A stretch of 64,000 bases of DNA from positions 317,887 through 381,886 of the IMG/VR virus record IMGVR_UViG_3300043399_000877; one strand, written 5' to 3'. Below are positions 52,814-64,000 of this stretch, piece by piece. The notes beneath the pieces were generated by a model. That model did no database searches. It saw nothing but the letters and a program-made list of their open reading frames with translations, and was not told where the DNA came from. The first letter of the stretch is position 1, and every line of letters starts with the position of its first letter. A program made the position numbers and the translations under genes.

Positions 52814-53446
52814 TTAAATCTCCACATCAATGTAGTCAAGCTCAGCCAAGCACTGAAATACTGTTCCTTCAATCTTCTCACGGCTCGTGTAGTGCCAGTG
52901 ACCGAAGTACCACTGCTCAGGCTGATGCTGCTCAAACATATATTGCAGCATTTCTCCCGTGCGTGTCAAGTACAATTTTGGCTGGCCGCCCCAAACACGT
53001 TTGCCGGTACGGATGAACATGCGATAGGCAGTGAGTGTTGGGCAGTCATGAGTGATCATAACTCTCGGACGGACCGTTAGGTATGTATCAAGTACACGCT
53101 CAAATTCAGAAGAACTAAGTTGCTCAGTCTGCCACCAGTCGTATCCGGGAGTACGATAATCAGCATCGATACTCCAGGCACCGCCCACAAACATCACATC
53201 ATTCTCTACTGTACCGTCTGCTATCCAAGAAAGCATTTTAGGACACTGATTGGGATTATCGTGATTACCACGAATAAATCTGTGGCCAGTTCCACCAATA
53301 GTGTCGTTTACACGATCGTGCCAATAATCACCTTGTCCCATACCGACGCCGAAATCGCCCAGCTGAATACTACGATCGCAGTCGGCGATTACAGTTTGAT
53401 AGTCGTTCCAGAGACCGTGGACGTCTCCGATTATTCTTGTTAACAT
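52814..53446 (-). CDS. Calcineurin-like metallophosphoesterase
   Basis: GDVHG, LGDFG, RGNHD, THDCP and FGHWH motifs. Confidence 0.92.
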   Translation of the reverse strand: MLTRIIGDVHGLWNDYQTVIADCDRSIQLGDFGVGMGQGDYWHDRVNDTIGGTGHRFIRGNHDNPNQCPKMLSWIADGTVENDVMFVGGAWSIDADYRTPGYDWWQTEQLSSSEFERVLDTYLTVRPRVMITHDCPTLTAYRMFIRTGKRVWGGQPKLYLTRTGEMLQYMFEQHQPEQWYFGHWHYTSREKIEGTVFQCLAELDYIDVEI

Positions 53447-53454
53447 TGTTTTCC

Positions 53455-53841
53455 TTACTGTAGAGCTCTTAACAGGTACTCTACCGCTGTTATTACATTG
53501 CCCTGCGTTAAAGGCAGTGCAGTTCTACCTTTACACTTAGGGCATTCTGCGGGTTTGTCAAGTTTAATGTGATAAAAATTAACTTCTTTTTCACCAGTGA
53601 ATGTGCTGACGTATTCTTTTCGTTCCAGTGTACATTCAATTTTATCGCACCATCCACAACTGGGGCAAAAATGCGTGGTTCTTCTTGTAACAAAACTGGT
53701 TTTTACGTCGTTGCCCATCTTCGTTTCCAAAACAGATTTTTGAGTATCACTCTCAGTGGGGGGTTCTCCAGACACTGTTTTTTCACCAAAAGTGGAGAGT
53801 ACGGAGGAGAGTAATTTTCCAAAAGATCCTGCATTTTTCAT
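53455..53841 (-). CDS. Zn-ribbon hypothetical protein
   Basis: CPSC...CPKC. Confidence 0.5.
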   Translation of the reverse strand: MKNAGSFGKLLSSVLSTFGEKTVSGEPPTESDTQKSVLETKMGNDVKTSFVTRRTTHFCPSCGWCDKIECTLERKEYVSTFTGEKEVNFYHIKLDKPAECPKCKGRTALPLTQGNVITAVEYLLRALQ

Positions 53842-53843
53842 TG

Positions 53844-54086
53844 TTATGTGTTTGTTTGTTCTTTAAGTTTGCGGCAACATACCACTGGCATACCAACCAC
53901 TTCAAGTTTTTCGTGATCGTATATATAGCCCGGTTTGTCGAGAATAACTAGGGCAATTGTTTTTGCGTAATCACCCCAGCCGCCGATCCGGCCTTGCATC
54001 CCATCCATACTGCTGGCAGTATGACAAAATTCAATGCGATCTCCGACTTTTGCCAGTTCCCCACGATCTCTGTCATATTTAAACAT
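53844..54086 (-). CDS. Hypothetical SH3-like protein
   Basis: DRDRGELAKVGDRI. Confidence 0.5.
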   Translation of the reverse strand: MFKYDRDRGELAKVGDRIEFCHTASSMDGMQGRIGGWGDYAKTIALVILDKPGYIYDHEKLEVVGMPVVCCRKLKEQTNT

Positions 54087-55231
54087 TAGTTGCCTCCTTT
54101 GAGCAAAAACTCGTTGCTGATAGTTTTGAAGCTGAAGCTCGGGTCTTCGTTACACTTCCAGACAAGACCTTCGCGGACCTTGTGGTTGATGCTCGGACCT
54201 TCTGCAAGAACAAGACCTTCTTCGACACTGACGGGTGCTTTCCAGTTAGTACCATGCAGCGGAACATGTTCAAGACCGATCATGTGGCAGACGCTGCGGC
54301 GTTCACCTGGAGCGAGGTATGTGTGCTTTGCAATATCAAAGATGTCGAACACAAAGAATCGATGTTCTTTGAAGCCTTCACGGTTACCTTGAATGCCCGG
54401 CCCCATGATTTCGCCCTGAAAAGCAAGACCATCCGGAATCCTATCGCCGATCTTCAGGGCCATAGCTACAAAGGTGTTGTCTTTGTTCTCTTCGTTGATC
54501 TTCAGTTCAAGGTTCCGGCTGCAAACACGAAGTTCGCCTTCCCAACGGAAGATCGTGCAGCTTGAGCCATCGAGCTTCATGGTGACTTCGTAAGTCGGCT
54601 CTTTGAAGTCTTCTGGCACGACGACCGGATGCTCTTCAAGAGTCTGAGTCTCGGCGTTCCAGACCTTCTCCGTAGCGAACCGCTTGGCCCGCTTTTGGAT
54701 GTCGCCAAAGCAGTTCTGAATCCGCTCCTGATCGGTCTTGGGAATCAGCGAAGTCGGGAACGTGCCAGCAGCTTGACCTTGAAGCTGAGCAGGAATAGGT
54801 GCTTCCCACTTCTGGATGCCAAGAATTTCAGTAAGATCGGTATCTACTTCAAACAGTCTAACTGGTTCAAGATCACCAAACTGAACATAACCTCCGGGAA
54901 GGTATTGAATAAACTGTTGTGGAAGTTCACGAACAGTTTCGTCAATCTTGAGTAGAAGCCCCTGCGAAACTTGTCCACGAAGCTTAATAGTCCGCAGACG
55001 TTCACCCTTGACACCGTTGTATTCACGAGGTTCTTGACCTTTCGAGAGGAATGGAGCAAGTTCATGAGGAACCCATGAGTCAATTTCTAGGTAGAGAGCA
55101 AGATCACCAACCTTGAACTCATCTTTCTTGACGACGACTTTCCAGCCGTCAACAGTGGCAACCACGATGGCGTCGGCGCCTTCAATAGGTTGAATGTCGG
55201 CGATACGCCGAATAGTGGCAAGTTTACGCAT
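54086..55231 (-). CDS. RNA ligase, DRB0094 family
   Basis: MRKLATIRRI, LRGQVSQGL, PKTDQERIQN, KLDGSS, QGEIMG, EGLVWK and FKTIS motifs. Confidence 0.93.
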   Translation of the reverse strand: MRKLATIRRIADIQPIEGADAIVVATVDGWKVVVKKDEFKVGDLALYLEIDSWVPHELAPFLSKGQEPREYNGVKGERLRTIKLRGQVSQGLLLKIDETVRELPQQFIQYLPGGYVQFGDLEPVRLFEVDTDLTEILGIQKWEAPIPAQLQGQAAGTFPTSLIPKTDQERIQNCFGDIQKRAKRFATEKVWNAETQTLEEHPVVVPEDFKEPTYEVTMKLDGSSCTIFRWEGELRVCSRNLELKINEENKDNTFVAMALKIGDRIPDGLAFQGEIMGPGIQGNREGFKEHRFFVFDIFDIAKHTYLAPGERRSVCHMIGLEHVPLHGTNWKAPVSVEEGLVLAEGPSINHKVREGLVWKCNEDPSFSFKTISNEFLLKGGN

Positions 55232-55589
55232 ATTTGTTCCTTCCGATTCCGGCAATGTCGTTAAGCATTTTTTCCTGTTCAGCCCACTTGAGTTGTTGAT
55301 CTACACGAATCTTCAAATAGTCACGAATCAGTTCTCTGTTATTCCAAATCCACTGTTCATAGCGAGCCAGCTTCTTGCAGCACTCTTCGCATTCTTCTAC
55401 GAAAGTATGTCCTTCGACTTCAACATATCGAAACCAACGACTGCTTTCCCACTCTTCTTCATCGTAGTCTTCGGGTGGGTTCCAATCGATACCGCAGTCA
55501 CAGTGTAACCATGCACTGTACCCACCGCGGCCGGCATCCCACATCATATCGCTTGCAATCCCATCTCGGGGCATGGTATATTGTGTCAT
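55224..55589 (-). CDS. Hypothetical Zn-binding protein
   Basis: CDCG...CEEC. Confidence 0.55.
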   Translation of the reverse strand: MTQYTMPRDGIASDMMWDAGRGGYSAWLHCDCGIDWNPPEDYDEEEWESSRWFRYVEVEGHTFVEECEECCKKLARYEQWIWNNRELIRDYLKIRVDQQLKWAEQEKMLNDIAGIGRNKYA

Positions 55590-55609
55590 AGGCTTTCCTT
55601 GTTTAAGTT

Positions 55610-55638
55610 AACCTAGCAGATGCCGGCAGCGTTGTCAA
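55610..55638 (-). promoter_or_regulatory. Sigma70-type promoter
   Basis: TTGACA-N17-TAGGTT with TG extension. Confidence 0.65.
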
Positions 55639-55657
55639 CAGTTAGATCGTTACTGCA

Positions 55658-55885
55658 TTAAGTTTGTGGCCGTGCGACCCATTTTCCCGAAAGGATCGCA
55701 AATGGGCCAATGTACCAATGAGTAAAATGAACCAATTTGCTTTCGCTAAGTTCAGATACTTTTGAAAAGTATGGTTGAACTATTTCGTTATGCTTCCATG
55801 GAGTCAACGAGCGCCAATCATTTGATAGCAACAGTTTAATTATATGCTTTTTTGACTTGATTTCGTAGAGCTCGATGGCCATCAT
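55658..55885 (-). CDS. Hypothetical protein
   Basis: 75-aa ORF with SD. Confidence 0.45.
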   Translation of the reverse strand: MMAIELYEIKSKKHIIKLLLSNDWRSLTPWKHNEIVQPYFSKVSELSESKLVHFTHWYIGPFAILSGKWVARPQT

Positions 55886-55903
55886 TCCCTCGTTTAGTTT
55901 AGT

Positions 55904-56161
55904 TTAGTTCACTGGATACAGCACAACGCAACGAGGTTTGGCGAGTATTTCTGCCCATTCGTCCGGGCCCATATCCGCCTCGTCAGGTGTCCAATTCGTG
56001 CTGTATACACTGCCGTACCAAGTGGTTTCGGCAATGTATACACAGTTTTCATCAGCGCCCTCAAGCGGGCTGTACCCGTTGCCTTCGGCATCCTTTTGCA
56101 GGATTACTTCTGAGTCCGGGTCCATGGTTTGCAGTTGTTCAATAAGTTCAGATACTTTCAT
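55904..56161 (-). CDS. Conserved small phage protein
   Basis: MKVSELIEQL...QKDAEGNGYSPL motif. Confidence 0.65.
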   Translation of the reverse strand: MKVSELIEQLQTMDPDSEVILQKDAEGNGYSPLEGADENCVYIAETTWYGSVYSTNWTPDEADMGPDEWAEILAKPRCVVLYPVN

Positions 56162-57357
56162 TCCGTGATCTCCTGATTTTCAGATTCAATGCCCAGCCAT
56201 TGCGCACATTCCCGCCACTTGACGTTGGTGGTGATATGCTTGCGAATATGATCAAGAATCATTTCACGACCGTCACGGCCGCCAAAACGTCCGAATACAT
56301 ACTGCGGTGCAAAACTGTCGTTACCTTTGATAGTGGGCATCCACTCCTGCGCATAACGCTTGCGATCAAGACCGCTGGCTACCACAGTGTTCCAGTAACG
56401 CTCATAGCTTTCCACTGCCTTATGCAGTCGGTCACCAAACCGCTGAGCGAAGCTGTGAACACGATCGGCTTCATGCTGCGGCAGCATGGGCAGGACGTCG
56501 TCAATTTCTTCGTTCAGGATAAGGTCCACAATATGACGATCAAAGCGGATACGATCCACAGTCTTGTGAATGCGAACGTACCAATCGTTCTTGATCTTCA
56601 ACATATGCCCATCCGCAAAACGAATGATGTCACCTTCGCGTCCTTCTTGTTCGCGAGCGCGAGCAATGTAGTCGGTAAGGTTGCCTTCTACGCTGCCGTA
56701 TACCGGAACAATATTGAACGGAACATGACGATTGAACGGGACATACTCTCCGGTCAGATTGTCACGAATAGCAGTCAGGATCAGATCATCTTCTGCATAG
56801 TCGATAACAATCTGGTTCTTACGGCTGGTCCATTCAAAGATCGGAGTACGGTTGCCGGCCATCATAGCTTCGAGGAACATGAGTTTTTGGTCATAGTCCG
56901 GTTGTGCTACCAGCCAGGTTTCGGCGTTCATGGATACTTCGGTCACGCCCATTTTGGTGCCGAGGCGAATTTTGCCGCCAACATCAACCGGACGGATCAT
57001 GCTGCCGTCCAGCTTTTCCATAATCACATGCGGCTGACTCAGATCGATACGATTCATCTGAGTTTCTTCGCGTTCGTTCACGTTGAAGAACTTGTGGAAC
57101 GGACGGCTCATAATACGACCATCCGGATAGAAGATCAGTCCACGGCATTCACGACGCATGCGGTTGGTAAGCGATCGTTCGGCTCGCATCTTTGCACTTC
57201 CGCCTGCAACATTTACTGGAGGAAAAGTATCCTCCATGCTCACTGCATAGTTGATTACGGTACCGTAATCACGTTCGGCAATTACGAATTCTTCGCGACC
57301 TTCAATGTGAGGCAGCACGTCTTCAATGACGCGGATTTCAGGAAACTTGTAGTGCAT
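56158..57357 (-). CDS. RNA ligase, T4 Rnl1 family
   Basis: RECRGLIF, RPFHKFFN, EKLDGSM, EGDII and KIKNDWY motifs. Confidence 0.92.
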   Translation of the reverse strand: MHYKFPEIRVIEDVLPHIEGREEFVIAERDYGTVINYAVSMEDTFPPVNVAGGSAKMRAERSLTNRMRRECRGLIFYPDGRIMSRPFHKFFNVNEREETQMNRIDLSQPHVIMEKLDGSMIRPVDVGGKIRLGTKMGVTEVSMNAETWLVAQPDYDQKLMFLEAMMAGNRTPIFEWTSRKNQIVIDYAEDDLILTAIRDNLTGEYVPFNRHVPFNIVPVYGSVEGNLTDYIARAREQEGREGDIIRFADGHMLKIKNDWYVRIHKTVDRIRFDRHIVDLILNEEIDDVLPMLPQHEADRVHSFAQRFGDRLHKAVESYERYWNTVVASGLDRKRYAQEWMPTIKGNDSFAPQYVFGRFGGRDGREMILDHIRKHITTNVKWRECAQWLGIESENQEITE

Positions 57358-57520
57358 TTTGTGCCTCCGACTTTCTTTTACGGTTACGATAGATCAGTTT
57401 TTTAAAATCGTTTCTCTCTTGCATCCAGCGGTCACGCCGTCGCCGGAGCGAGTCCAGTTGGTACTGTGCTCGGCGAATCTGTTCGTCGAGCTCTGCTATA
57501 TCCTTTGCCGATCGCATCAC
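57338..57520 (-). CDS. Small coiled-coil protein
   Basis: 60-aa ORF downstream of a promoter-like sequence. Confidence 0.45.
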   Translation of the reverse strand: MMRSAKDIAELDEQIRRAQYQLDSLRRRRDRWMQERNDFKKLIYRNRKRKSEAQNALQVS

Positions 57521-57564
57521 GCATCCCTGTTGCTGTTAAGGTTACACTAAGGGATCGTGCAACA

Positions 57565-58032
57565 TTAGTCAACAGCTTTTTCATCAACATCAGCTAAACG
57601 TGCTTGAATCTCGAGATAAAACTGATGATACTTTGCAGTACGAGCGATGTCTCGTTCAGTCACGCCCTTGAGGCGACGAATGTCTGTGTTGTGCCGCAGG
57701 TCGCACAGCTTGACGCGCATGGCATCCTTGCTTGCAAAGACGCGTGTCTTATACTCGTCTAACGTCTCTCCCGGCAGTTTAGTAAGTGCTGCAATGCCCT
57801 CTAGGATACGTGCTGTCATGCCCGCCTCGCGCAGGTCTGCATAAGTAACGTCAGTGTCCTCAACAACGTCGTGGCCCAGCGCAATGCACTGCAATTCCTC
57901 GTCGTCGGTCTTGAGGTAATGCATGACCTTAAGCGGGTGCAAAATGTAGGGTTTCCCACCACGATCAAATTGACCGTGATGGGCATTGGTTGCAATGTGC
58001 AGCATACGACTTAATAGCTCGCCTCGTTTCAT
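57565..58032 (-). CDS. HD-domain hydrolase (RelA/SpoT hydrolase, Mesh1-like)
   Basis: AHHGQFDRGGKPYILHP, HDVVEDT and VKLCDLRHN motifs. Confidence 0.88.
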   Translation of the reverse strand: MKRGELLSRMLHIATNAHHGQFDRGGKPYILHPLKVMHYLKTDDEELQCIALGHDVVEDTDVTYADLREAGMTARILEGIAALTKLPGETLDEYKTRVFASKDAMRVKLCDLRHNTDIRRLKGVTERDIARTAKYHQFYLEIQARLADVDEKAVD

Positions 58033-58055: not shown

Positions 58056-58084
58056 AGTATATGACGAGCCGTGTGCGTTGTCAA
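58056..58084 (-). promoter_or_regulatory. Sigma70-type promoter
   Basis: TTGACA-N17-TATACT. Confidence 0.75.
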
Positions 58085-58833
58085 CCGCTAGTTCCGGGAA
58101 TTGCGCTGCATCTTGCGGAAACCAGCTCAGGATAAATGTCCCAATTACGCATCAAGAATTTGAGTCTAACGCCGTAACTGGTAATCGTACACTGTTGCCA
58201 ACCGGGTGCGATAGGTGCTGCTACTTCTTCCGGATAAAACAACCAAGCTTCGGTATTAAAGAAACTCCACACATGGTTAAAGTTGCTGGGCGAAATTCTA
58301 AAATACAAGCTATCTTCGGCACCACAGCTGAACGATTCACCAGCGGCTGGAGCCAAACACCCTCTTACGGAAAAAATGTTCGAATCCGGTGCAATCTCCT
58401 CAGCATTGGAAAGATACACAAACTCGTCCGTTCTTCCAGTTACCAAGTAAATGGTAGCATCAAATACAATGAACATTGCATGAAAGCCCAGGTACAACAC
58501 TGAAACTGTCGCTGCAATTACCACAGCACCGCGTATTTTTGAAAAACGACGCTCACCATCGGCATTTTTGCTGTAAACGGTACGATCCCATACCCAACGA
58601 AAATGCTGCCAGAACACCAATTTAAACAGCCAGTATGCCCAGCTATAAAACGGATAGATAAAGCGTTGCCAAAATACTGTCAAACTGGCAACAAACTGAT
58701 ACCAAAAACGTGTCAACGACCACCAGCGGCGAGCAGTTTCTGGAACTATTCCGATGCCCTGGAGCCGGGCACGTTCGGCTTCTTCTTGCTCCAGGTCACG
58801 GATGGCTTTCTTTGCCAGTTCTTCGGATTTCAT
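58081..58833 (-). CDS. Membrane protein with a Trp-rich amphipathic region and a Cys-containing outer domain
   Basis: Trp/Phe-rich N-terminal half, one TM, four Cys in the C-terminal domain. Confidence 0.65.
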   Translation of the reverse strand: MKSEELAKKAIRDLEQEEAERARLQGIGIVPETARRWWSLTRFWYQFVASLTVFWQRFIYPFYSWAYWLFKLVFWQHFRWVWDRTVYSKNADGERRFSKIRGAVVIAATVSVLYLGFHAMFIVFDATIYLVTGRTDEFVYLSNAEEIAPDSNIFSVRGCLAPAAGESFSCGAEDSLYFRISPSNFNHVWSFFNTEAWLFYPEEVAAPIAPGWQQCTITSYGVRLKFLMRNWDIYPELVSARCSAIPGTSG

Positions 58834-58844
58834 GTCAGTCCCCT

Positions 58845-60980
58845 TTAGGAAAAGATCGAGTCAAACTCGCGGGTTTCAGTGTTATACACGAGTTCAAGTT
58901 TAGTGCTTTGCACACGGTTTTCCAGGATCAAGTCTGCAATAAGCGGTTCAATGTTGCTTACCACATATCCCTGTAGGCCGCGGGCGCCGTTGCGTGGGTC
59001 GTAATGATCTGCACAGAACGCACTCACACTAGCATCGCTGACCACAATATCCATGCCGCTTTCGCGATATGCACGATTGAGATCTTTGAGTTCGCGCTTG
59101 ACAATCTTCTCGATGCTGTCCAGTTCCAGTCTACGGAAGCAGACGATGTTCTGGCGACCGGCAAAACGGTTAAGGAATTCCGGACGGTAAATTCTATCCA
59201 GTTCCTCGTTTGCAAGAGCCTCTGCTTCCGTGTAAGTCAGCCCAACATCCAGGAAGTAAGGCTGGCCGATGTTGGTGGTCATAATCACCATCGACTCCGA
59301 GAAGTTGACCGTACGCCCGTGGTTGTCAGTCAGTCGACCATCACTCAGGATTTGCAGGAACAGGTCAAACACTGCCGGATCAGCCTTCTCAATTTCATCA
59401 AAAAGGATGATACGGTTGGGGTTTTGACGCATTGCGTTGGTAAGGATACCACCGCGTTCCGATCCTTCGTAACCAGCCGGAGCACCGATCAGTTTTGCAA
59501 CCGAATGCTTTTCCATGTATTCACTCATGTCGAAGCGAGTCAGTGCAGCTTCATCATCTTTCAGTGCATGTGCCAGTGCCTTACACACTTCGGTCTTACC
59601 GGTACCACTCGGGCCCATAATAAGGAAGCTAGCCTGCGGCTTGCTGCCGTTACGACGACCGATACGTGCAACCTTAATTGCGTTTGCAATTTTCTTGATT
59701 ACCTCGGTTTGTCCGAACACACGGCTGTTGAGTGCAGCTTCAAGGTTACGCAGCTTTTCGCGCTCGTCTTCGTTCAGCTTGTTGGCCGGGATACCCGACA
59801 GTCGGCTAAACTCCGCAAGCACAAAGTCTTTGGTAAGGCTCAGCTGATCGTTGATCTCACCCGTAAGCACGTCAAACTCTGCACGGTTTTCGTTAATAAC
59901 CGTCTGAAACTTGCGAATTTCTTCGCGCAGCGCACGAACACGGGCACTTTCAAATCCGGCAGCTTTTGCAGTGCTGCTGAACATCTGAATACGACGAGTG
60001 GGCAGGGCTTCTTCTTCGACCTTTTCGCCACGAGCTTCCATTTCAGCTTCCAGCTTCTTCTGTGCAGCAATTTGCTCTTCGAGATCAATAACTGCAAGTT
60101 CACCATCACGCTGGAATTGGAACAGCTCTTTGATACGATCTTGAGTTTTCGCAAACTCGGCATCCAATGCAACAATAGCCGGATCACCTTCCTGCGCACC
60201 TTCGATCAACATCTTGACCACTTTAGGGTGTCGTTTGTGTGCGTCCAGTCTATAAGTTGACAAGGCGCGGTCCAGTAGGTTAGTGCTGCGCTCCGGCTGT
60301 GCGCGGCTCAAACTTGCATCGCGAGTACGATACTTGTTGGTCAGTTCAACAGCAGTTTCCACAGCATCCGCATCGATGCGAATATCGTGGTGGTTGCTGA
60401 GACCTTCGGCAGTAACTCGAACGATTTCCATAAGGTCATTGCCAGTGGGCTCATTGAGATCAATCATCGTATAGTGCTGACGCATGTCGCTGTGTGCGCT
60501 CAACACCATGTCAAGATCCTGATCCTTGGTCTCAAGAATAACCTGGGTCTCGCCGTTCTTAACAAGGCTGTTCAGACTGTTGATAAAGTGGCTGCAACCG
60601 TTGTTGCGAGCAGCTTCGATAAAGTCACGAACGTCCTCGATAACAAGAATACTATCTGGCGTTCGCTTGAGGATAGCAAGAACGTTTGTGAACCCTTTGT
60701 TAATTTCCTCATGATTACCAGAAGTAAAGAGTTCGTCAGTTCTGAGCCAGAAAAGACGCTTGCTGATAATATCAAAAGTCACATCCGGCTGGTCTTTGGC
60801 GGCTTGCAGTCCGAGAGTGAGGGTGCTTGCGCCCACACCTCCGGGACCAACCAGGATAACTGATGCGGCCTTATTCCGCATCAGCACCGAGGACAACCGC
60901 TTGAGATCAGCATCGCGCCCAACCAGCCGGAAGTTTTTGTGTTTTGCCAGCAGTTCGTTGCCGGAAATCAAGTATTGCAT
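58845..60980 (-). CDS. ClpB/ClpA-like Hsp100 AAA+ ATPase lacking the N-domain, with degenerate NBD1
   Basis: NBD2 GPSGTGKT, RFDMSEYMEKHSV, GAPAGYEG, LFDEIEKA, GRLTD, RPEFLNR and GARGL; NBD1 Walker A reads GPGGVGAS. Confidence 0.92.
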   Translation of the reverse strand: MQYLISGNELLAKHKNFRLVGRDADLKRLSSVLMRNKAASVILVGPGGVGASTLTLGLQAAKDQPDVTFDIISKRLFWLRTDELFTSGNHEEINKGFTNVLAILKRTPDSILVIEDVRDFIEAARNNGCSHFINSLNSLVKNGETQVILETKDQDLDMVLSAHSDMRQHYTMIDLNEPTGNDLMEIVRVTAEGLSNHHDIRIDADAVETAVELTNKYRTRDASLSRAQPERSTNLLDRALSTYRLDAHKRHPKVVKMLIEGAQEGDPAIVALDAEFAKTQDRIKELFQFQRDGELAVIDLEEQIAAQKKLEAEMEARGEKVEEEALPTRRIQMFSSTAKAAGFESARVRALREEIRKFQTVINENRAEFDVLTGEINDQLSLTKDFVLAEFSRLSGIPANKLNEDEREKLRNLEAALNSRVFGQTEVIKKIANAIKVARIGRRNGSKPQASFLIMGPSGTGKTEVCKALAHALKDDEAALTRFDMSEYMEKHSVAKLIGAPAGYEGSERGGILTNAMRQNPNRIILFDEIEKADPAVFDLFLQILSDGRLTDNHGRTVNFSESMVIMTTNIGQPYFLDVGLTYTEAEALANEELDRIYRPEFLNRFAGRQNIVCFRRLELDSIEKIVKRELKDLNRAYRESGMDIVVSDASVSAFCADHYDPRNGARGLQGYVVSNIEPLIADLILENRVQSTKLELVYNTETREFDSIFS

Positions 60981-60995
60981 GTTGTCCTCTCCTGT

Positions 60996-62672
60996 TTACG
61001 CACCGAGCCCAAACGGGCTCCGCGCAGTTTTCTTTTCAGTCTTTTCTTCGGCTTTCTTGCCTTCACCCATAACGATGTCGGCAACCACTGCCTTGCTGTC
61101 AAGCACAGTTTCTGCAACCTCACGAGCAGTCTTTTCCATGACTTCCAGATTTTCACGCAGCGTAGCAATACCCTGGCGAGTAAACTCGGTAGCGACACGG
61201 TTGACTTCGCCGTATTGTGCGAGGCCTTCGATAGCACGTACCATCTGCTCGTTGCGATCCTGGATGCCCATAGCGATCCGCATGCTTTCCTTCTGAGCGA
61301 TAACGTCGGTATTGTCGCTCATAGCTTTCAGCGTTTCCGCAGTCATAGCGTTAGACTCGGCAATCGCCGCAGCACCGACAGCCTGGATAACAGTACTGAG
61401 TCGATCAGCAACACCGGCAACACCGCGGGCATGCATATCACGTGCCATCTGGATCTGCTGCTTGTTTGCATCGTTCATGTTCTTGATACGGATGCTTGCG
61501 CTGGTCAAGTCAGCAACAGTTGCAACAGTATCGGCGGCCGACGTTTCCAGCATGGTGATATGCTCGTCAAGATCGCGCTGTTTGCCTTCGCGTTGCAGTT
61601 TCTGCACCATGTTTTCTTCCGGAGCAGCCTTACCGACTTCTTCGCGGATTCGCTTGTTTTCCTGTTCAGCACCTTTGACTCCTTCGCCGAGCAGAGCATA
61701 GATAAAGCTCATTTGTCCGTTGGCATCTTCAAGGTTCTGAATCTGATCGCCCATGTGCGACAAATGATCACGAATCGTTTCGATCTTGTCCTTGCTGGTC
61801 TGCACAAAGTTGACAGCCGAATCGATCAGACGCTTGCTGCGTTGCTGATGTTCGTCGGTTGCAAGGTTCAGCATTTCCTTCAGCTTCTCTTTGGCTTCAA
61901 GATTGGTAATCTTGCTCTCAGAGTTTTGTGCAGTCGCCTGCTCAGCATTTGCCTTTGCTTCTTCGCTAATGCGTTGCAGTTCAGCAGCCGCATTTTCCAT
62001 AGCGACCTTGTTGCGGGCGATCTTTTCAATCGACTCCGGCTTGATGCCGCCAAAACCAAAGAAGCCCTTGTTTTGCTCTTCAATGCGGTTTTGCGTTTTC
62101 AGTTCGTCAATACGTTCTTGCACACGCTTGATCTGGTCAGTCAGTTCTGCATCGCGCTGTGCAATAGCTTCGCGACGCTTTTCTTCATCCTTAATTTCAC
62201 GGAATGCATCCAGGGTTTGGTTGTCTGCACGAAGAACGTGCAAGGCATCCAGGATGTCGGTCAGCGGCTTCATGTCACCTTCGAAGTCGATCAGCGCATT
62301 GTTGATGTCTTCAAAAGTAGTTTTCAGCGTAGCAAAGTTGCGGGTGTCCGACATCTTGATGATCTGCGTGGCCATAACTTCACGTTCGGCTTGCAGATAC
62401 TCTTTGAAAACGTCAAACGCCTTCACACGCTCACGGTTTTCTTCGCGGGTGCCAGCAAATGTAAGCAGTTTAGTAACCGCAGCTTGTTTTTGTTCCGGGC
62501 TCAACGCCTCGTCAAAAATCGTCTGGAAAAACGGATTGCTTTCAATATTAGCAAACCGGCTATCACGAGCTTTGGTTTCTTCTTTCTGCTTGGTCGAGGC
62601 AGCGGTGGTCCCGCGGACTCGGATGATTTCTTCTAGCTGCTCTTGGCGGCTAAGTTTTGCGCTTCCGGCCAT
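60996..62672 (-). CDS. Long coiled-coil protein
   Basis: 558 aa, heptad-rich, central KGFFGFGG. Confidence 0.75.
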   Translation of the reverse strand: MAGSAKLSRQEQLEEIIRVRGTTAASTKQKEETKARDSRFANIESNPFFQTIFDEALSPEQKQAAVTKLLTFAGTREENRERVKAFDVFKEYLQAEREVMATQIIKMSDTRNFATLKTTFEDINNALIDFEGDMKPLTDILDALHVLRADNQTLDAFREIKDEEKRREAIAQRDAELTDQIKRVQERIDELKTQNRIEEQNKGFFGFGGIKPESIEKIARNKVAMENAAAELQRISEEAKANAEQATAQNSESKITNLEAKEKLKEMLNLATDEHQQRSKRLIDSAVNFVQTSKDKIETIRDHLSHMGDQIQNLEDANGQMSFIYALLGEGVKGAEQENKRIREEVGKAAPEENMVQKLQREGKQRDLDEHITMLETSAADTVATVADLTSASIRIKNMNDANKQQIQMARDMHARGVAGVADRLSTVIQAVGAAAIAESNAMTAETLKAMSDNTDVIAQKESMRIAMGIQDRNEQMVRAIEGLAQYGEVNRVATEFTRQGIATLRENLEVMEKTAREVAETVLDSKAVVADIVMGEGKKAEEKTEKKTARSPFGLGA

Positions 62673-62696
62673 TCTTTTCTCCTGAATGTCTAAATG

Positions 62697-62873
62697 TTAC
62701 TTGGATTTTTCGACAACGACGGTTTCAACCACTTTGCCAGTTTTGGGGTCTTGCATCAGCTTGTAGCTGTAGGCCACGTGGTCTTTTCTCAAAAAGAAAC
62801 GAACCATTCGACCTACAGCAAAGGCCATGATTAATGACAGCAATGTAGCAAGTGCAATGGAAAGAAGTTCCAT
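62697..62873 (-). CDS. Small membrane protein (58 aa)
   Basis: Manual translation MELLSIALATLLSLIMAFAVGRMVRFFLRK...; SD GAGG; promoter upstream. Confidence 0.6.
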   Translation of the reverse strand: MELLSIALATLLSLIMAFAVGRMVRFFLRKDHVAYSYKLMQDPKTGKVVETVVVEKSK

Positions 62874-62904
62874 TAGTGTGTCCTCTGTATTTGTTTATGT
62901 TGCT

Positions 62905-62932
62905 ATTATAGACTTTGTTACACGTAAGTCAA
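62905..62932 (-). promoter_or_regulatory. Sigma70-type promoter of the Clp operon
   Basis: TTGACT-N16-TATAAT. Confidence 0.7.
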
Positions 62933-62945
62933 TTGCTAATATGGT

Positions 62946-62968
62946 GAAAGGGCGCATTGCGCCCTTTC
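62946..62968. terminator. Intrinsic terminator hairpin
   Basis: gaaagggcgc-att-gcgccctttc. Confidence 0.75.
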
Positions 62969-63152: not shown

Positions 63153-64000
63153 TTAGAACCTTTCCAGTTCACGAGCGACATATTCTTCCTCTTTGACGTC
63201 GGCTCTTGCACGAATATCAGCAAAAGTGTCTTCAACAAGGATTTCACCGTTGAGGTAAACAGTCCTGAGAATGTTACCCTTGCGTTCAGCCACTTCTTCC
63301 GGAACCGTGTGATAACCACAGCTTCCGACGCCACACTCATACACGAGACCCAAACGTCCTTCCTTGGATTGTTTTCCGTGGTCAGTAATTGGATCTTTGC
63401 TGAATCCAACCCACTTTCCGTTATTTACACGGATTGCGCTTGCCTTCATTGCATATTTCAGCGTGTCACGGTTCCAGGCCTGTAGCAGGCCCCCGCCCAT
63501 ACCGAACGCAATGTTTTCTGCACTAAACCCGGCCTCTCGGAGGTTTTCGAGAATAATCGGAAGAGTGTACTCGTTGATCCCGTCTCCTTGGATAACACGC
63601 ACACTCGGAGGAAGTACTTTGTATCCTTTGCTGTTCACAGTGTAGCCGAAACGCTCTGCGAGAATTTCGACAACTTCAATCGGAACCACAGTAGGATCAC
63701 CCGAGTCCGGACGTACCACCAAGGTGCCGCCCATAGCTTCAACTTTGTCTTTGAGTTTTCCACCCCAGAGATCACGAGTTGCTGCATAAATGTCGAAACT
63801 GTCCGACACACATGCAAGGATCTTTCCGGGTCCGCCGAAGGTGTTAAGCATATTTTCATATGCATCCACTTCAAGATCACGGCCCCAGCTAGTAATAGTG
63901 CTATGTTCCGAAGCCGGAATACTGAAGCCAACCACTTCATCAGTGTTGTAGTAGGCCATGACACCTTCGATGGCTTCAAACGTGTCGGTGCCCATGAAGT
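63153..64000 (-). CDS. nadV: Nicotinamide phosphoribosyltransferase (NAMPT), 5' part outside the window
   Basis: SIPASEHS, VSDSFD, VVRPDSGDP, IQGDG, FGMGGGLLQ, RDT and KDPITD motifs. Confidence 0.95.
   Translation of the reverse strand, partial: FMGTDTFEAIEGVMAYYNTDEVVGFSIPASEHSTITSWGRDLEVDAYENMLNTFGGPGKILACVSDSFDIYAATRDLWGGKLKDKVEAMGGTLVVRPDSGDPTVVPIEVVEILAERFGYTVNSKGYKVLPPSVRVIQGDGINEYTLPIILENLREAGFSAENIAFGMGGGLLQAWNRDTLKYAMKASAIRVNNGKWVGFSKDPITDHGKQSKEGRLGLVYECGVGSCGYHTVPEEVAERKGNILRTVYLNGEILVEDTFADIRARADVKEEEYVARELERF

What the first reader, a model, noticed from the sequence alone, without database searches (positions are those of the whole stretch)
58081..62932. Four-gene operon: small TM peptide, long coiled coil, half-dead ClpB-like ATPase and membrane protein
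Seen: one promoter (62905-62932) precedes four closely spaced genes. The Hsp100 lacks the N-domain, its NBD1 Walker A lysine is replaced (GPGGVGAS), its middle coiled coil is long, NBD2 is intact and no clear IGF loop is visible. The 558-aa partner has a KGFFGFGG turn, as in membrane-associated helical proteins. Inference: a membrane-associated remodelling machine in which the ATPase disassembles a dedicated coiled-coil polymer (ClpV/Vps4-like logic), perhaps for membrane protection or superinfection exclusion.
Basis: partly seen in the sequence, partly recalled or inferred. Interest (0 to 1): 0.62.

Follow-up and report, generated by a model that had tools for sequence, protein, structure and literature searches.

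The report
ClpB-like ATPase, coiled-coil, membrane-protein module
A giant phage carries three genes (a long helical protein, a ClpB-type unfolding motor whose first ring is dead, and a membrane protein) that stay together in the same order in many giant phages and a few water and soil bacteria, so they form a real, undescribed protein machine whose job is not yet known.

Summary
Four tightly spaced minus-strand genes follow an 11/12 sigma-70-like promoter in the last 64 kb of a 382-kb jumbo-phage record.

The conserved unit has three genes, not four:
- a 558-aa all-helical protein;
- a 711-aa Hsp100;
- a 250-aa membrane protein with an OB-like, four-cysteine C-terminal domain.

All three, in this order, occur in every related locus long enough to show them. 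These are Agrobacterium phage Atu_ph07, six other phage or phage-like contigs and 17 alphaproteobacterial chromosomes. One very distant bacterial locus keeps only the first two. The 58-aa TM peptide is lineage-specific.

The ATPase lacks the N-domain. Throughout the family NBD1 has lost the Walker A lysine, the Walker B DE, sensor 1, the arginine fingers and the pore-loop tyrosine. NBD2 is intact and there is no ClpP loop. Bacterial carriers also have canonical ClpB and ClpA.

The helical protein has no Pfam, PDB or TelA relationship (hhalign 0.5%). Its family holds at least 211 50%-identity clusters, all of one architecture.

Best reading: a dedicated, membrane-anchored, single-motor AAA+ remodelling module. 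The linkage is shown; the mechanism is inferred. Superinfection exclusion as the primary role is unsupported.

The parts
62905..62932 (-). Sigma-70-like promoter TTGACT-16-TATAAT upstream of the unit
   Evidence: 11 of 12 consensus positions. The sequence was read. This is a consensus match only; the region has no more promoter-like sites than its shuffles.
62946..62968 (.). GC-rich 10-bp-stem hairpin between the upstream gene and the promoter, a probable terminator or insulator
   Evidence: (10 pairs, 7 GC). The T-run lies on the + strand side only.
62697..62873 (-). 58-aa peptide with one N-terminal TM helix; lineage-specific and not part of the conserved module
   Evidence: Translation. Kyte-Doolittle peak 2.38. 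No family hit. No homologue in related loci. Unrelated small TM ORFs occupy the same position in three phage relatives.
60996..62672 (-). 558-aa all-helical partner protein of an orphan family. It has a [KR]-x-[FWL]-F-G-x-G hairpin tip (residues 202-209), an N-terminal NPFF motif and a C-terminal SPF-x-L tail after a disordered linker.
   Evidence: Translation. Alignment A1. AF2 model with pLDDT 71.8, all helices. No Pfam, NCBIfam, PHROG or PDB relative. 211 clusters at E<=1e-30, all about 530-615 aa.
58845..60980 (-). 711-aa Hsp100/ClpB-like AAA+ ATPase with no N-domain, a degenerate NBD1, a ClpB-type middle domain, an intact NBD2 and no ClpP-binding loop
   Evidence: Pfam AAA_lid_9 + AAA_2 + ClpB_D2-small. 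Alignment to ClpB 1qvr from residue 155. Motif table for 17 family members against two canonical ClpB. Below every NCBIfam equivalog cut-off.
58081..58833 (-). 250-aa membrane protein. It has an N-terminal helical region with an aromatic-rich segment (38-82), one clear TM helix (about 102-131) and a C-terminal OB-like beta-barrel (134-243) with four invariant cysteines.
   Evidence: Translation. Alignment A2 with invariant C159, C170, C215, C242. AF2 pLDDT 87.8. OB-fold matches at Z 6-7.2 over about 90 residues. Hydropathy. Homologues in phage and bacterial trios.
58056..58084 (-). Second strong promoter-like site (TTGACA-17-TATACT) overlapping the stop of the last gene; marks the downstream boundary of the unit
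   Evidence: 11 of 12.

Best explanation
The locus encodes a dedicated three-component AAA+ remodelling module that works at the inner membrane.

The ATPase is a ClpB-derived hexameric unfoldase. Only its second ring (NBD2) hydrolyses ATP and grips substrate. The first ring has become a pseudo-ATPase scaffold and docking surface that replaces the lost N-domain.

The roughly 560-aa helical-hairpin protein is its dedicated client. It probably self-associates on or near the membrane through its aromatic-glycine hairpin tip. It is probably recognised through a short conserved terminal motif and then pulled apart or recycled by the ATPase, in the manner of Vps4 with ESCRT-III, ClpV with VipA/B or NSF with SNAREs.

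The third protein anchors or triggers the system. It is a bitopic membrane protein whose OB-like, four-cysteine domain most likely faces the periplasm and whose helical N-terminal part faces the cytoplasm.

What is shown: the three genes are one evolutionary unit, NBD1 is dead and NBD2 intact across the family, and the third protein is membrane-bound. What is inferred: who binds whom, polymer formation, the direction of action, the topology and the physiological role. The role is most likely maintenance or remodelling of the cell envelope, which jumbo phages bring along for their long infection cycle.
For: Synteny.
- The same three genes in the same order occur in Atu_ph07.
- They occur in six further phage or phage-like contigs: L005, L054, L056, L057, L058 and L060.
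- They occur in bacterial loci. Of the 17 loci from the species-genome scan, 15 show all three genes and the other two run off their contig within the ATPase gene. L013 among them looks like a binned phage contig. Three metagenomic chromosome loci add to this.
- ATPase and membrane genes overlap by 4 bp in most bacterial loci.

ATPase.
- In all 17 ATPases aligned, the NBD1 lysine is replaced (GPGGVG[ACS]).
- Walker B DE becomes ED or EN.
- The pore-loop tyrosine, sensor 1 and the arginine fingers are lost.
- All NBD2 motifs are kept. Four more distant members agree.
- Bacterial carriers also encode a canonical ClpB (1419 and 1416 bits, above the cut-off) and a ClpA.

Helical protein.
- The family has one fixed architecture, with no fusions, in at least 211 clusters.
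- Its C-terminal tail motif follows a low-confidence linker.

Membrane protein.
- One strong TM helix, a positively charged preceding loop and four invariant cysteines in the C-terminal barrel.
Against: - No direct evidence of contact. The complex prediction of NBD1 plus middle domain against the helical protein gave no verdict.
- No fold or profile link from the helical protein to any known polymer-forming family.
- The hairpin-tip motif and the tail motif occur in only about two thirds and one half of the family representatives, so they cannot be universal recognition elements.
- One distant bacterial locus (L059) keeps the helical protein and the ATPase but has no detectable homologue of the membrane protein.
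- Four cysteines could also be a cytoplasmic zinc site, which would invert the proposed topology.
- No expression data were found.
Confidence: 0.45

Rival explanations
1. Extraction or adaptor model. The helical protein is not the client. It is an adaptor or regulator that takes over the role of the missing N-domain and of DnaK. The real substrates are membrane proteins, possibly the 250-aa protein itself or envelope complexes it marks, which the ATPase pulls out of the membrane in the manner of Msp1 or FtsH.
For: - The N-domain, the usual adaptor and substrate site, is absent.
- The ATPase and membrane genes are translationally coupled in most bacterial loci, which suggests stoichiometric partners.
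- The helical protein's tip and tail motifs are not universal, as expected for a regulator rather than a threaded client.
Against: - The membrane protein is undetectable in one distant locus that keeps the other two genes.
- No protease partner or ClpP loop is present.
- There is no evidence of contact for any pair.
Confidence: 0.22
2. Conflict system. The trio is an accessory defence, abortive-infection or superinfection-exclusion module, carried by a few bacteria against phages and by jumbo phages against competitors. It would act by ATP-driven perturbation of the membrane.
For: - Distribution in bacteria is patchy: 1 of 401 sampled genomes of the class, and 6 of 61 and 4 of 61 in the two carrier families.
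- It occurs in several unrelated jumbo-phage lineages, and phage and bacterial branches are mixed in the tree.
- NBD2 resembles AAA domains of candidate defence proteins PDC-M37B and DolB.
Against: - No PADLOC model matches the helical protein above noise or the membrane protein at all.
- The flanks in bacteria are housekeeping genes with no integrase, transposase or known defence neighbour. These flanks are conserved across Taklimakanibacter-like genomes.
- In phages the neighbours are NAD-salvage and RNA-repair genes.
- The PADLOC hits cover only the generic AAA_2 core.
Confidence: 0.15
3. Generic chaperone. The ATPase is simply a phage copy of ClpB that dissolves aggregates together with host DnaK, and the neighbouring genes are unrelated.
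For: - The best sequence matches are ClpB.
- A ClpB-type middle domain is present.
- The Atu_ph07 genome paper lists gp492 as ClpB (PMC6102473).
Against: - It scores 395.8 bits against a ClpB equivalog cut-off of 1232.1.
- NBD1 is fully degenerate and lacks the pore-loop tyrosine, and the N-domain is missing.
- Synteny with two orphan families is strict.
- Bacterial carriers already have a canonical ClpB.
Confidence: 0.05

Closest known systems
ClpB/Hsp104 disaggregases (Hsp100 class 1 AAA+)
   Same: Two AAA+ modules, with a ClpB-type coiled-coil middle domain inserted after the NBD1 lid. It has the AAA_2 and ClpB_D2-small domains, a ClpB-length loop with no ClpP-binding tripeptide, and complete NBD2 motifs.
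   Different: - No N-domain.
- NBD1 lacks the Walker A lysine, the Walker B DE, sensor 1, the arginine fingers and the pore-loop tyrosine in every member.
- The NBD2 pore loop is GYEG rather than GYVG, and there is a three-residue insertion after the arginine finger.
- It is always encoded with two orphan partners.
- It lies far below the ClpB equivalog cut-off.
ClpV (TssH) with the VipA/VipB sheath; Vps4 with ESCRT-III; NSF with SNAREs
   Same: The logic only: an AAA+ unfoldase encoded with, or dedicated to, one helical assembly that it recycles. NSF also has one inactive ring.
   Different: - No T6SS genes are nearby, and it scores below the TssH cut-off (319.5 against 884.95 bits).
- There is no MIT or N-domain for motif recognition.
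- The helical protein shows only generic hairpin similarity to Snf7/CHMP4B (Z about 10, below helical noise).
- No interaction has been shown.
TelA (PF05816) and PspA/IM30 (PF04012) helical membrane-stress proteins
   Same: All-helical, and roughly similar language-model features. The TelA-bearing Atlas cluster scored 0.89 with 202 shared features, and a PspA cluster gave TM 0.62 normalised to the PspA model's length but only 0.27 by the query.
   Different: - No Pfam hit in any of 30 members.
- Profile-profile probability against a TelA alignment is 0.5%.
- The length (about 560 aa) and the conserved motifs differ.
DUF1523 (PF07509) membrane proteins and OB-fold domains
   Same: - The C-terminal barrel of the 250-aa protein matches OB folds (Z 6-7.2, about 90 residues).
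- It matches an Atlas cluster partly annotated DUF1523 (TM 0.73 normalised to the cluster model's length; feature score 0.85).
- A short shared motif (YG-x-R ... [YF]P) aligns.
   Different: The hhalign probability is only 12% and no Pfam hit was found. DUF1523 itself has no known function.

Membership tests
Hsp100/ClpB-type class 1 AAA+ (superfamily level) | Tandem AAA+ modules with the NBD1 lid (AAA_lid_9), the AAA_2 core and the ClpB_D2-small domain | tested here: met
   Pfam E-values 1.4e-08, 7.4e-53 and 2.5e-13. Full-length alignment to ClpB 1qvr, E 9.5e-92.
Canonical ClpB (TIGR03346 equivalog) | Score above the curated equivalog cut-off | tested here: not met
   395.8 bits against a cut-off of 1232.1. 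The host-type ClpB of two carrier genomes scores 1419 and 1416.
Canonical ClpB | N-terminal substrate-binding domain | tested here: not met
   The alignment starts at ClpB residue 155 and at model position 173.
Canonical ClpB | Catalytically competent NBD1 (Walker A lysine, Walker B DE, sensor 1, arginine fingers, pore-loop tyrosine) | tested here: not met
   All of these are replaced in 17 of 17 family members aligned with two canonical ClpB and in four further distant members.
Canonical ClpB | Coiled-coil middle domain inserted in NBD1 | tested here: met
   161 residues against 150-151 in ClpB over the same columns; family range 113-171.
Canonical ClpB | Cooperation with DnaK through the middle domain | not testable with these tools
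   This needs a biochemical disaggregation assay. The phage genome has no Hsp70 gene.
ClpA/ClpC/ClpX-type ClpP partners | IGF/IGL-type ClpP-docking loop after sensor 1 of the last AAA module | tested here: not met
   The loop has ClpB length and no such tripeptide in any family member. The phage has a separate ClpA-like gene and a ClpP.
ClpV/TssH (TIGR03345) | Score above the cut-off and a T6SS gene context | tested here: not met
   319.5 bits against 884.95. No T6SS genes appear in any of the loci listed.
TelA (PF05816), for the 558-aa protein | Profile similarity to the TelA family | tested here: not met
   No Pfam hit in 30 members. hhalign A1 against a 10-sequence TelA alignment gives probability 0.5%. 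Two carrier genomes lack any TelA match.
PspA/IM30/ESCRT-III, for the 558-aa protein | Helical-hairpin core with family profile or fold similarity over the domain | tested here: inconclusive
   Only residues 169-250 match Snf7/CHMP4B/Shrub hairpins, at Z 9.4-10.3. This is below the noise level of about 13 stated for helical models. No Pfam hit.
DUF1523 (PF07509), for the 250-aa protein | Profile similarity of the C-terminal domain | tested here: inconclusive
   hhalign probability 12%, E 0.0024 over 66 columns. Atlas shape TM 0.73 normalised to the cluster model's length. Feature score 0.85. No Pfam hit.
OB fold, for the C-terminal domain of the 250-aa protein | Five-stranded barrel superposable on known OB domains | tested here: inconclusive
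   Nearly all of the top 50 matches are OB domains. The best Z is only 7.2 (rmsd 4.9, 95 residues) and Foldseek E is at least 0.029.

The most novel reading that the evidence does not exclude
The trio is a previously unrecognised type of envelope-remodelling machine, shared by jumbo phages and a few alphaproteobacteria and possibly of phage origin. A single-motor ClpB derivative, whose dead first ring serves as the docking platform, would cyclically assemble and strip a membrane-binding helical-hairpin polymer. Control would come from a membrane protein that reads the periplasm through an OB-like disulphide-bonded domain. This would be a bacterial and phage analogue of ESCRT-III/Vps4 built from unrelated parts.
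Probability: 0.25. Interest if true: 0.8.

Novelty: new variant of a known kind. Interest (0 to 1): 0.6.

Why it matters
Hsp100 proteins are textbook disaggregases. A subfamily that has given up its N-domain and its whole first ATPase ring, and is always encoded with two orphan proteins, would be a new way of specialising this motor.

It would also be a clean natural system for asking what a pseudo-ATPase ring contributes.

The module is shared between several jumbo-phage lineages and a few bacterial genera. It may therefore show what very large phages need to do to the host envelope during long infections, and it gives an example of gene flow between phages and hosts.

Three unnamed families would gain a context: the helical family (at least 211 clusters at 50% identity), the ATPase subfamily and the membrane family. 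Atu_ph07 with Agrobacterium, and the cultured Taklimakanibacter strains, offer tractable systems for testing.

Tried and rejected
- Complex prediction of ATPase residues 1-400 with the full helical protein: score 0.00, no verdict. It counts neither for nor against binding.
- Foldseek PDB and VIA wide searches with the helical-protein model: only generic coiled-coil and hairpin matches.
- PDB profile search with A1: nothing meaningful.
- TelA lead from the Atlas feature search: rejected by hhalign. A first script used some wrong-strand ORFs. It was repeated cleanly with the tool and gave probability 0.5%.
- DUF1523 lead: left inconclusive.
- Pfam scans of all alignment members gave scattered weak hits only. 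The exception is EI24/CysZ in 5 of 30 membrane proteins (best E 8.5e-06), covering the hydrophobic N-terminal part.
- PADLOC: only generic AAA-core hits.
- Near-identity DNA search in the phage collection: no match.
- Pattern scan for the membrane protein in viral contigs: no relative found. This was a sensitivity limit, since homologues were then found by other routes.
- Literature searches found no description of the module. The Atu_ph07 paper only lists gp492 as ClpB.
Full report
**Where the window lies.** The window is the last 64 kb of a single 381,886-bp virus record judged complete, that is, a jumbo phage. Its DNA recurs in freshwater, estuary and aquaculture metagenomes from at least three studies. 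Nearly all genes in this part run on the minus strand.

**Check of the observation.**
- The four minus-strand ORFs are 62873-62697 (58 aa), 62672-60996 (558 aa), 60980-58845 (711 aa) and 58833-58081 (250 aa), with gaps of 24, 15 and 11 nt.
- TTGACT-16-TATAAT lies at 62932-62905 and matches 11 of 12 consensus positions. A GC-rich hairpin (62946-62968) precedes it.
- A second 11/12 promoter-like site starts at the stop codon of the last gene. The four genes are therefore a plausibly separate transcription unit.
- The region has no excess of promoter-like sites over its shuffles, so this remains a consensus argument.

**The ATPase.**
- Pfam finds the NBD1 lid (AAA_lid_9), AAA_2 and ClpB_D2-small, but no AAA core hit for NBD1.
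- Against T. thermophilus ClpB the protein aligns from ClpB residue 155 to the end, so the N-domain is missing.
- I aligned 17 family members with two canonical ClpB taken from carrier genomes. In NBD1 every member has:
  - GPGGVG followed by A, C or S in place of the Walker A lysine;
  - IED or VEN in place of the Walker B IDE;
  - no pore-loop tyrosine (AKYRG becomes SGD-x-x);
  - no sensor-1 threonine and no arginine fingers.
- NBD2 keeps Walker A, Walker B, a GYEG pore loop, sensor 1, the arginine finger (followed by a family-specific three-residue insertion) and the GAR sensor 2.
- Four more distant members show the same pattern.
- The loop that carries IGF/IGL in ClpA-type proteins has ClpB length and no such motif.
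- The middle domain is ClpB-like in length: 161 residues against 150-151, with a family range of 113-171.
- The protein scores 395.8 bits against a ClpB equivalog cut-off of 1232.1. It is also below the ClpA, TssH, ClpK and ClpG cut-offs.

**The helical protein.**
- It has no significant match in Pfam, NCBIfam, PHROGs, PADLOC or PDB sequences.
- The AF2 model (pLDDT 71.8) is all-helical and built of long hairpins. KGFFGFGG sits at the tip between helices 153-199 and 212-251. A low-confidence linker (527-550) precedes a conserved terminal SPF-x-L motif.
- Fold searches return only generic coiled coils and hairpins.
- An Atlas feature search suggested TelA (0.89), but the profile-profile comparison gives 0.5% probability.
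- An exhaustive profile search finds 352 clusters at E<=0.001 and 211 at E<=1e-30. The full-length ones listed are 500-615 aa, with no fused domains.
- The tip motif occurs in about two thirds of the representatives and a terminal proline-aromatic motif in about half.

**The membrane protein.**
- It has no family hit of its own. Five of 30 homologues weakly match EI24/CysZ over the hydrophobic N-terminal part.
- The AF2 model (pLDDT 87.8) shows long N-terminal helices (3-27, 29-86), a helix at 99-132 and a C-terminal beta-barrel at 134-243.
- Hydropathy gives one clear TM segment at about 102-131, preceded by a loop with six basic residues. Segment 38-82 is aromatic-rich but not classically hydrophobic.
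- Four cysteines in the barrel are invariant.
- The barrel resembles OB folds (Z up to 7.2) and an Atlas cluster partly annotated DUF1523. The hhalign probability against DUF1523 is 12%.
- I infer an N-in, C-out orientation with a disulphide-bonded periplasmic domain. This is not shown.

**Synteny, the key result.**
- Atu_ph07 has the helical protein (gp493, 36% identity), the ATPase (gp492, 51%) and the membrane protein (gp488, 37-40% depending on the alignment), with three small genes inserted between the last two.
- The IMG/VR relative L005 has the three genes with one 94-aa insertion.
- Contigs L054, L056, L057, L058 and L060, whose gene content looks like that of phages, all carry the trio. 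In L060 the ATPase holds an intein.
- The same trio also lies in bacterial chromosomes. A pattern scan of 185,579 species genomes gave 17 loci: Dongia/Dongiaceae, Taklimakanibacter albus and T. lacteus, Parvibaculaceae and related MAGs. Fifteen show all three genes in the same order. The other two run off the contig within the ATPase gene. One of the 17, L013, groups with the phage clade and is probably a binned phage contig.
- Metagenomic chromosome contigs of 7.1 Mb, 1.8 Mb and 0.54 Mb agree.
- The ATPase and membrane genes overlap by 4 bp in most bacterial loci.
- In the Taklimakanibacter-like genomes the flanks are conserved housekeeping genes: MoxR, DUF1285, NUDIX, CCA-adding enzyme and cupin on one side, SDR and FolB on the other.
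- One very distant bacterial locus keeps the helical protein and the ATPase but has no detectable third gene.
- The 58-aa peptide has no homologue anywhere. Unrelated small TM ORFs occupy its position in three phage relatives.

**Distribution and history.**
- The module is rare in bacteria: 1 of 401 evenly sampled genomes of the class (the centre genome itself), 6 of 61 in one carrier family and 4 of 61 in the other.
- Carriers also have a canonical ClpB and a ClpA.
- A tree of 134 helical proteins shows two well-supported groups. One holds all named bacterial loci, with a basal lineage that includes L054, a contig whose gene content looks phage-like. The other holds the window and the other such contigs. 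Atu_ph07 is a long outlier.
- Under midpoint rooting the bacterial clade sits among phage lineages, which hints at a phage origin. The root and the long branches are uncertain, so I treat the direction of transfer as open.

**Interpretation.**
- Strict co-inheritance of three families across distant phages and bacteria, and the family-wide conversion of NBD1 into a pseudo-ATPase, show a dedicated machine rather than a general chaperone. The presence of ordinary ClpB in the same cells points the same way.
- The most economical mechanism has three parts:
  - NBD2 is the only motor.
  - The dead NBD1 ring, with the middle domain, provides the specific docking surface that the N-domain provides in other Hsp100s.
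  - The helical protein is the dedicated client, or less likely the adaptor, and the membrane protein localises or triggers the system at the inner membrane.
- The one interaction test I could run gave no verdict.
- The defence or exclusion reading cannot be dismissed, given the patchy bacterial distribution and the carriage by phages. The gene contexts seen here do not support it, however.

**Comparison with the known.** At superfamily level the ATPase is a member of Hsp100. It fails the defining features of ClpB, ClpA/C and ClpV listed in the membership table. No paper in the searched library describes the trio. The Atu_ph07 genome paper simply lists gp492 as ClpB (PMC6102473). I therefore rate it a new variant of a known kind: a ClpB-derived, single-motor AAA+ with two orphan partners.

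Noticed in passing
G000:C1:314605-316797 (just 5' of the window; loci L003, L049, L052) and G000:C1:22914-23459 (L068): The same phage genome also encodes a 758-aa ClpA-like Hsp100 with an N-domain (45% identical to annotated clpA records in the phage collection) and a ClpP protease, but no Hsp70. It therefore carries a separate, conventional Clp protease system alongside the trio.
   Followed up: partly
window 63153-63995 (-): This is the C-terminal part of a nicotinamide phosphoribosyltransferase gene, cut by the end of the record. Relatives keep NAD-salvage genes next to the trio: L057 has NAMPT plus an NMNAT/Nudix gene, and L056 has an NMN transporter plus an AAA_28 gene.
   Followed up: partly
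window 52814-58032 (-): An RNA-repair-like cluster lies directly downstream of the trio. It comprises an HD phosphohydrolase (57565-58032), an Rnl1-type RNA ligase (56158-57357), an Rnl2-type ligase with a PHA02142 OB domain (54086-55255) and a metallophosphoesterase (52814-53446).
   Followed up: partly
L060:1863-4928: In a distant phage-like contig the trio ATPase is 1021 aa, because an intein (Hom_end/LAGLIDADG hits) interrupts NBD2 close to the Walker A region.
   Followed up: partly
L057:5736-5900, L058:5724-5927, L005:5574-5918: Small single-TM ORFs with no sequence similarity to one another or to the window's 58-aa peptide sit immediately upstream of the helical-protein gene in three phage relatives. 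The position is conserved but the sequence is not.
   Followed up: partly
L013 (CAZIWB010000012.1, 178 kb, labelled Cellvibrionaceae MAG): This contig's trio groups with the phage clade in the tree, and the contig carries a divergent CCA-enzyme-like gene. It is probably a jumbo-phage contig binned into a bacterial MAG.
   Followed up: no
window 60939-62636 (+), 59004-60260 (+), 56200-57405 (+): Very long antisense open frames (565, 418 and 401 aa) lie opposite the helical-protein, ATPase and RNA-ligase genes. They are most likely shadow ORFs caused by codon composition, not genes.
   Followed up: no
L059:7001-11715: A very distant bacterial version sits on a contig with several ankyrin-repeat genes. 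It pairs a 612-aa helical protein with a 906-aa ATPase. A 69-aa TM peptide and a 328-aa proline-rich protein follow, in place of the usual membrane protein.
   Followed up: partly
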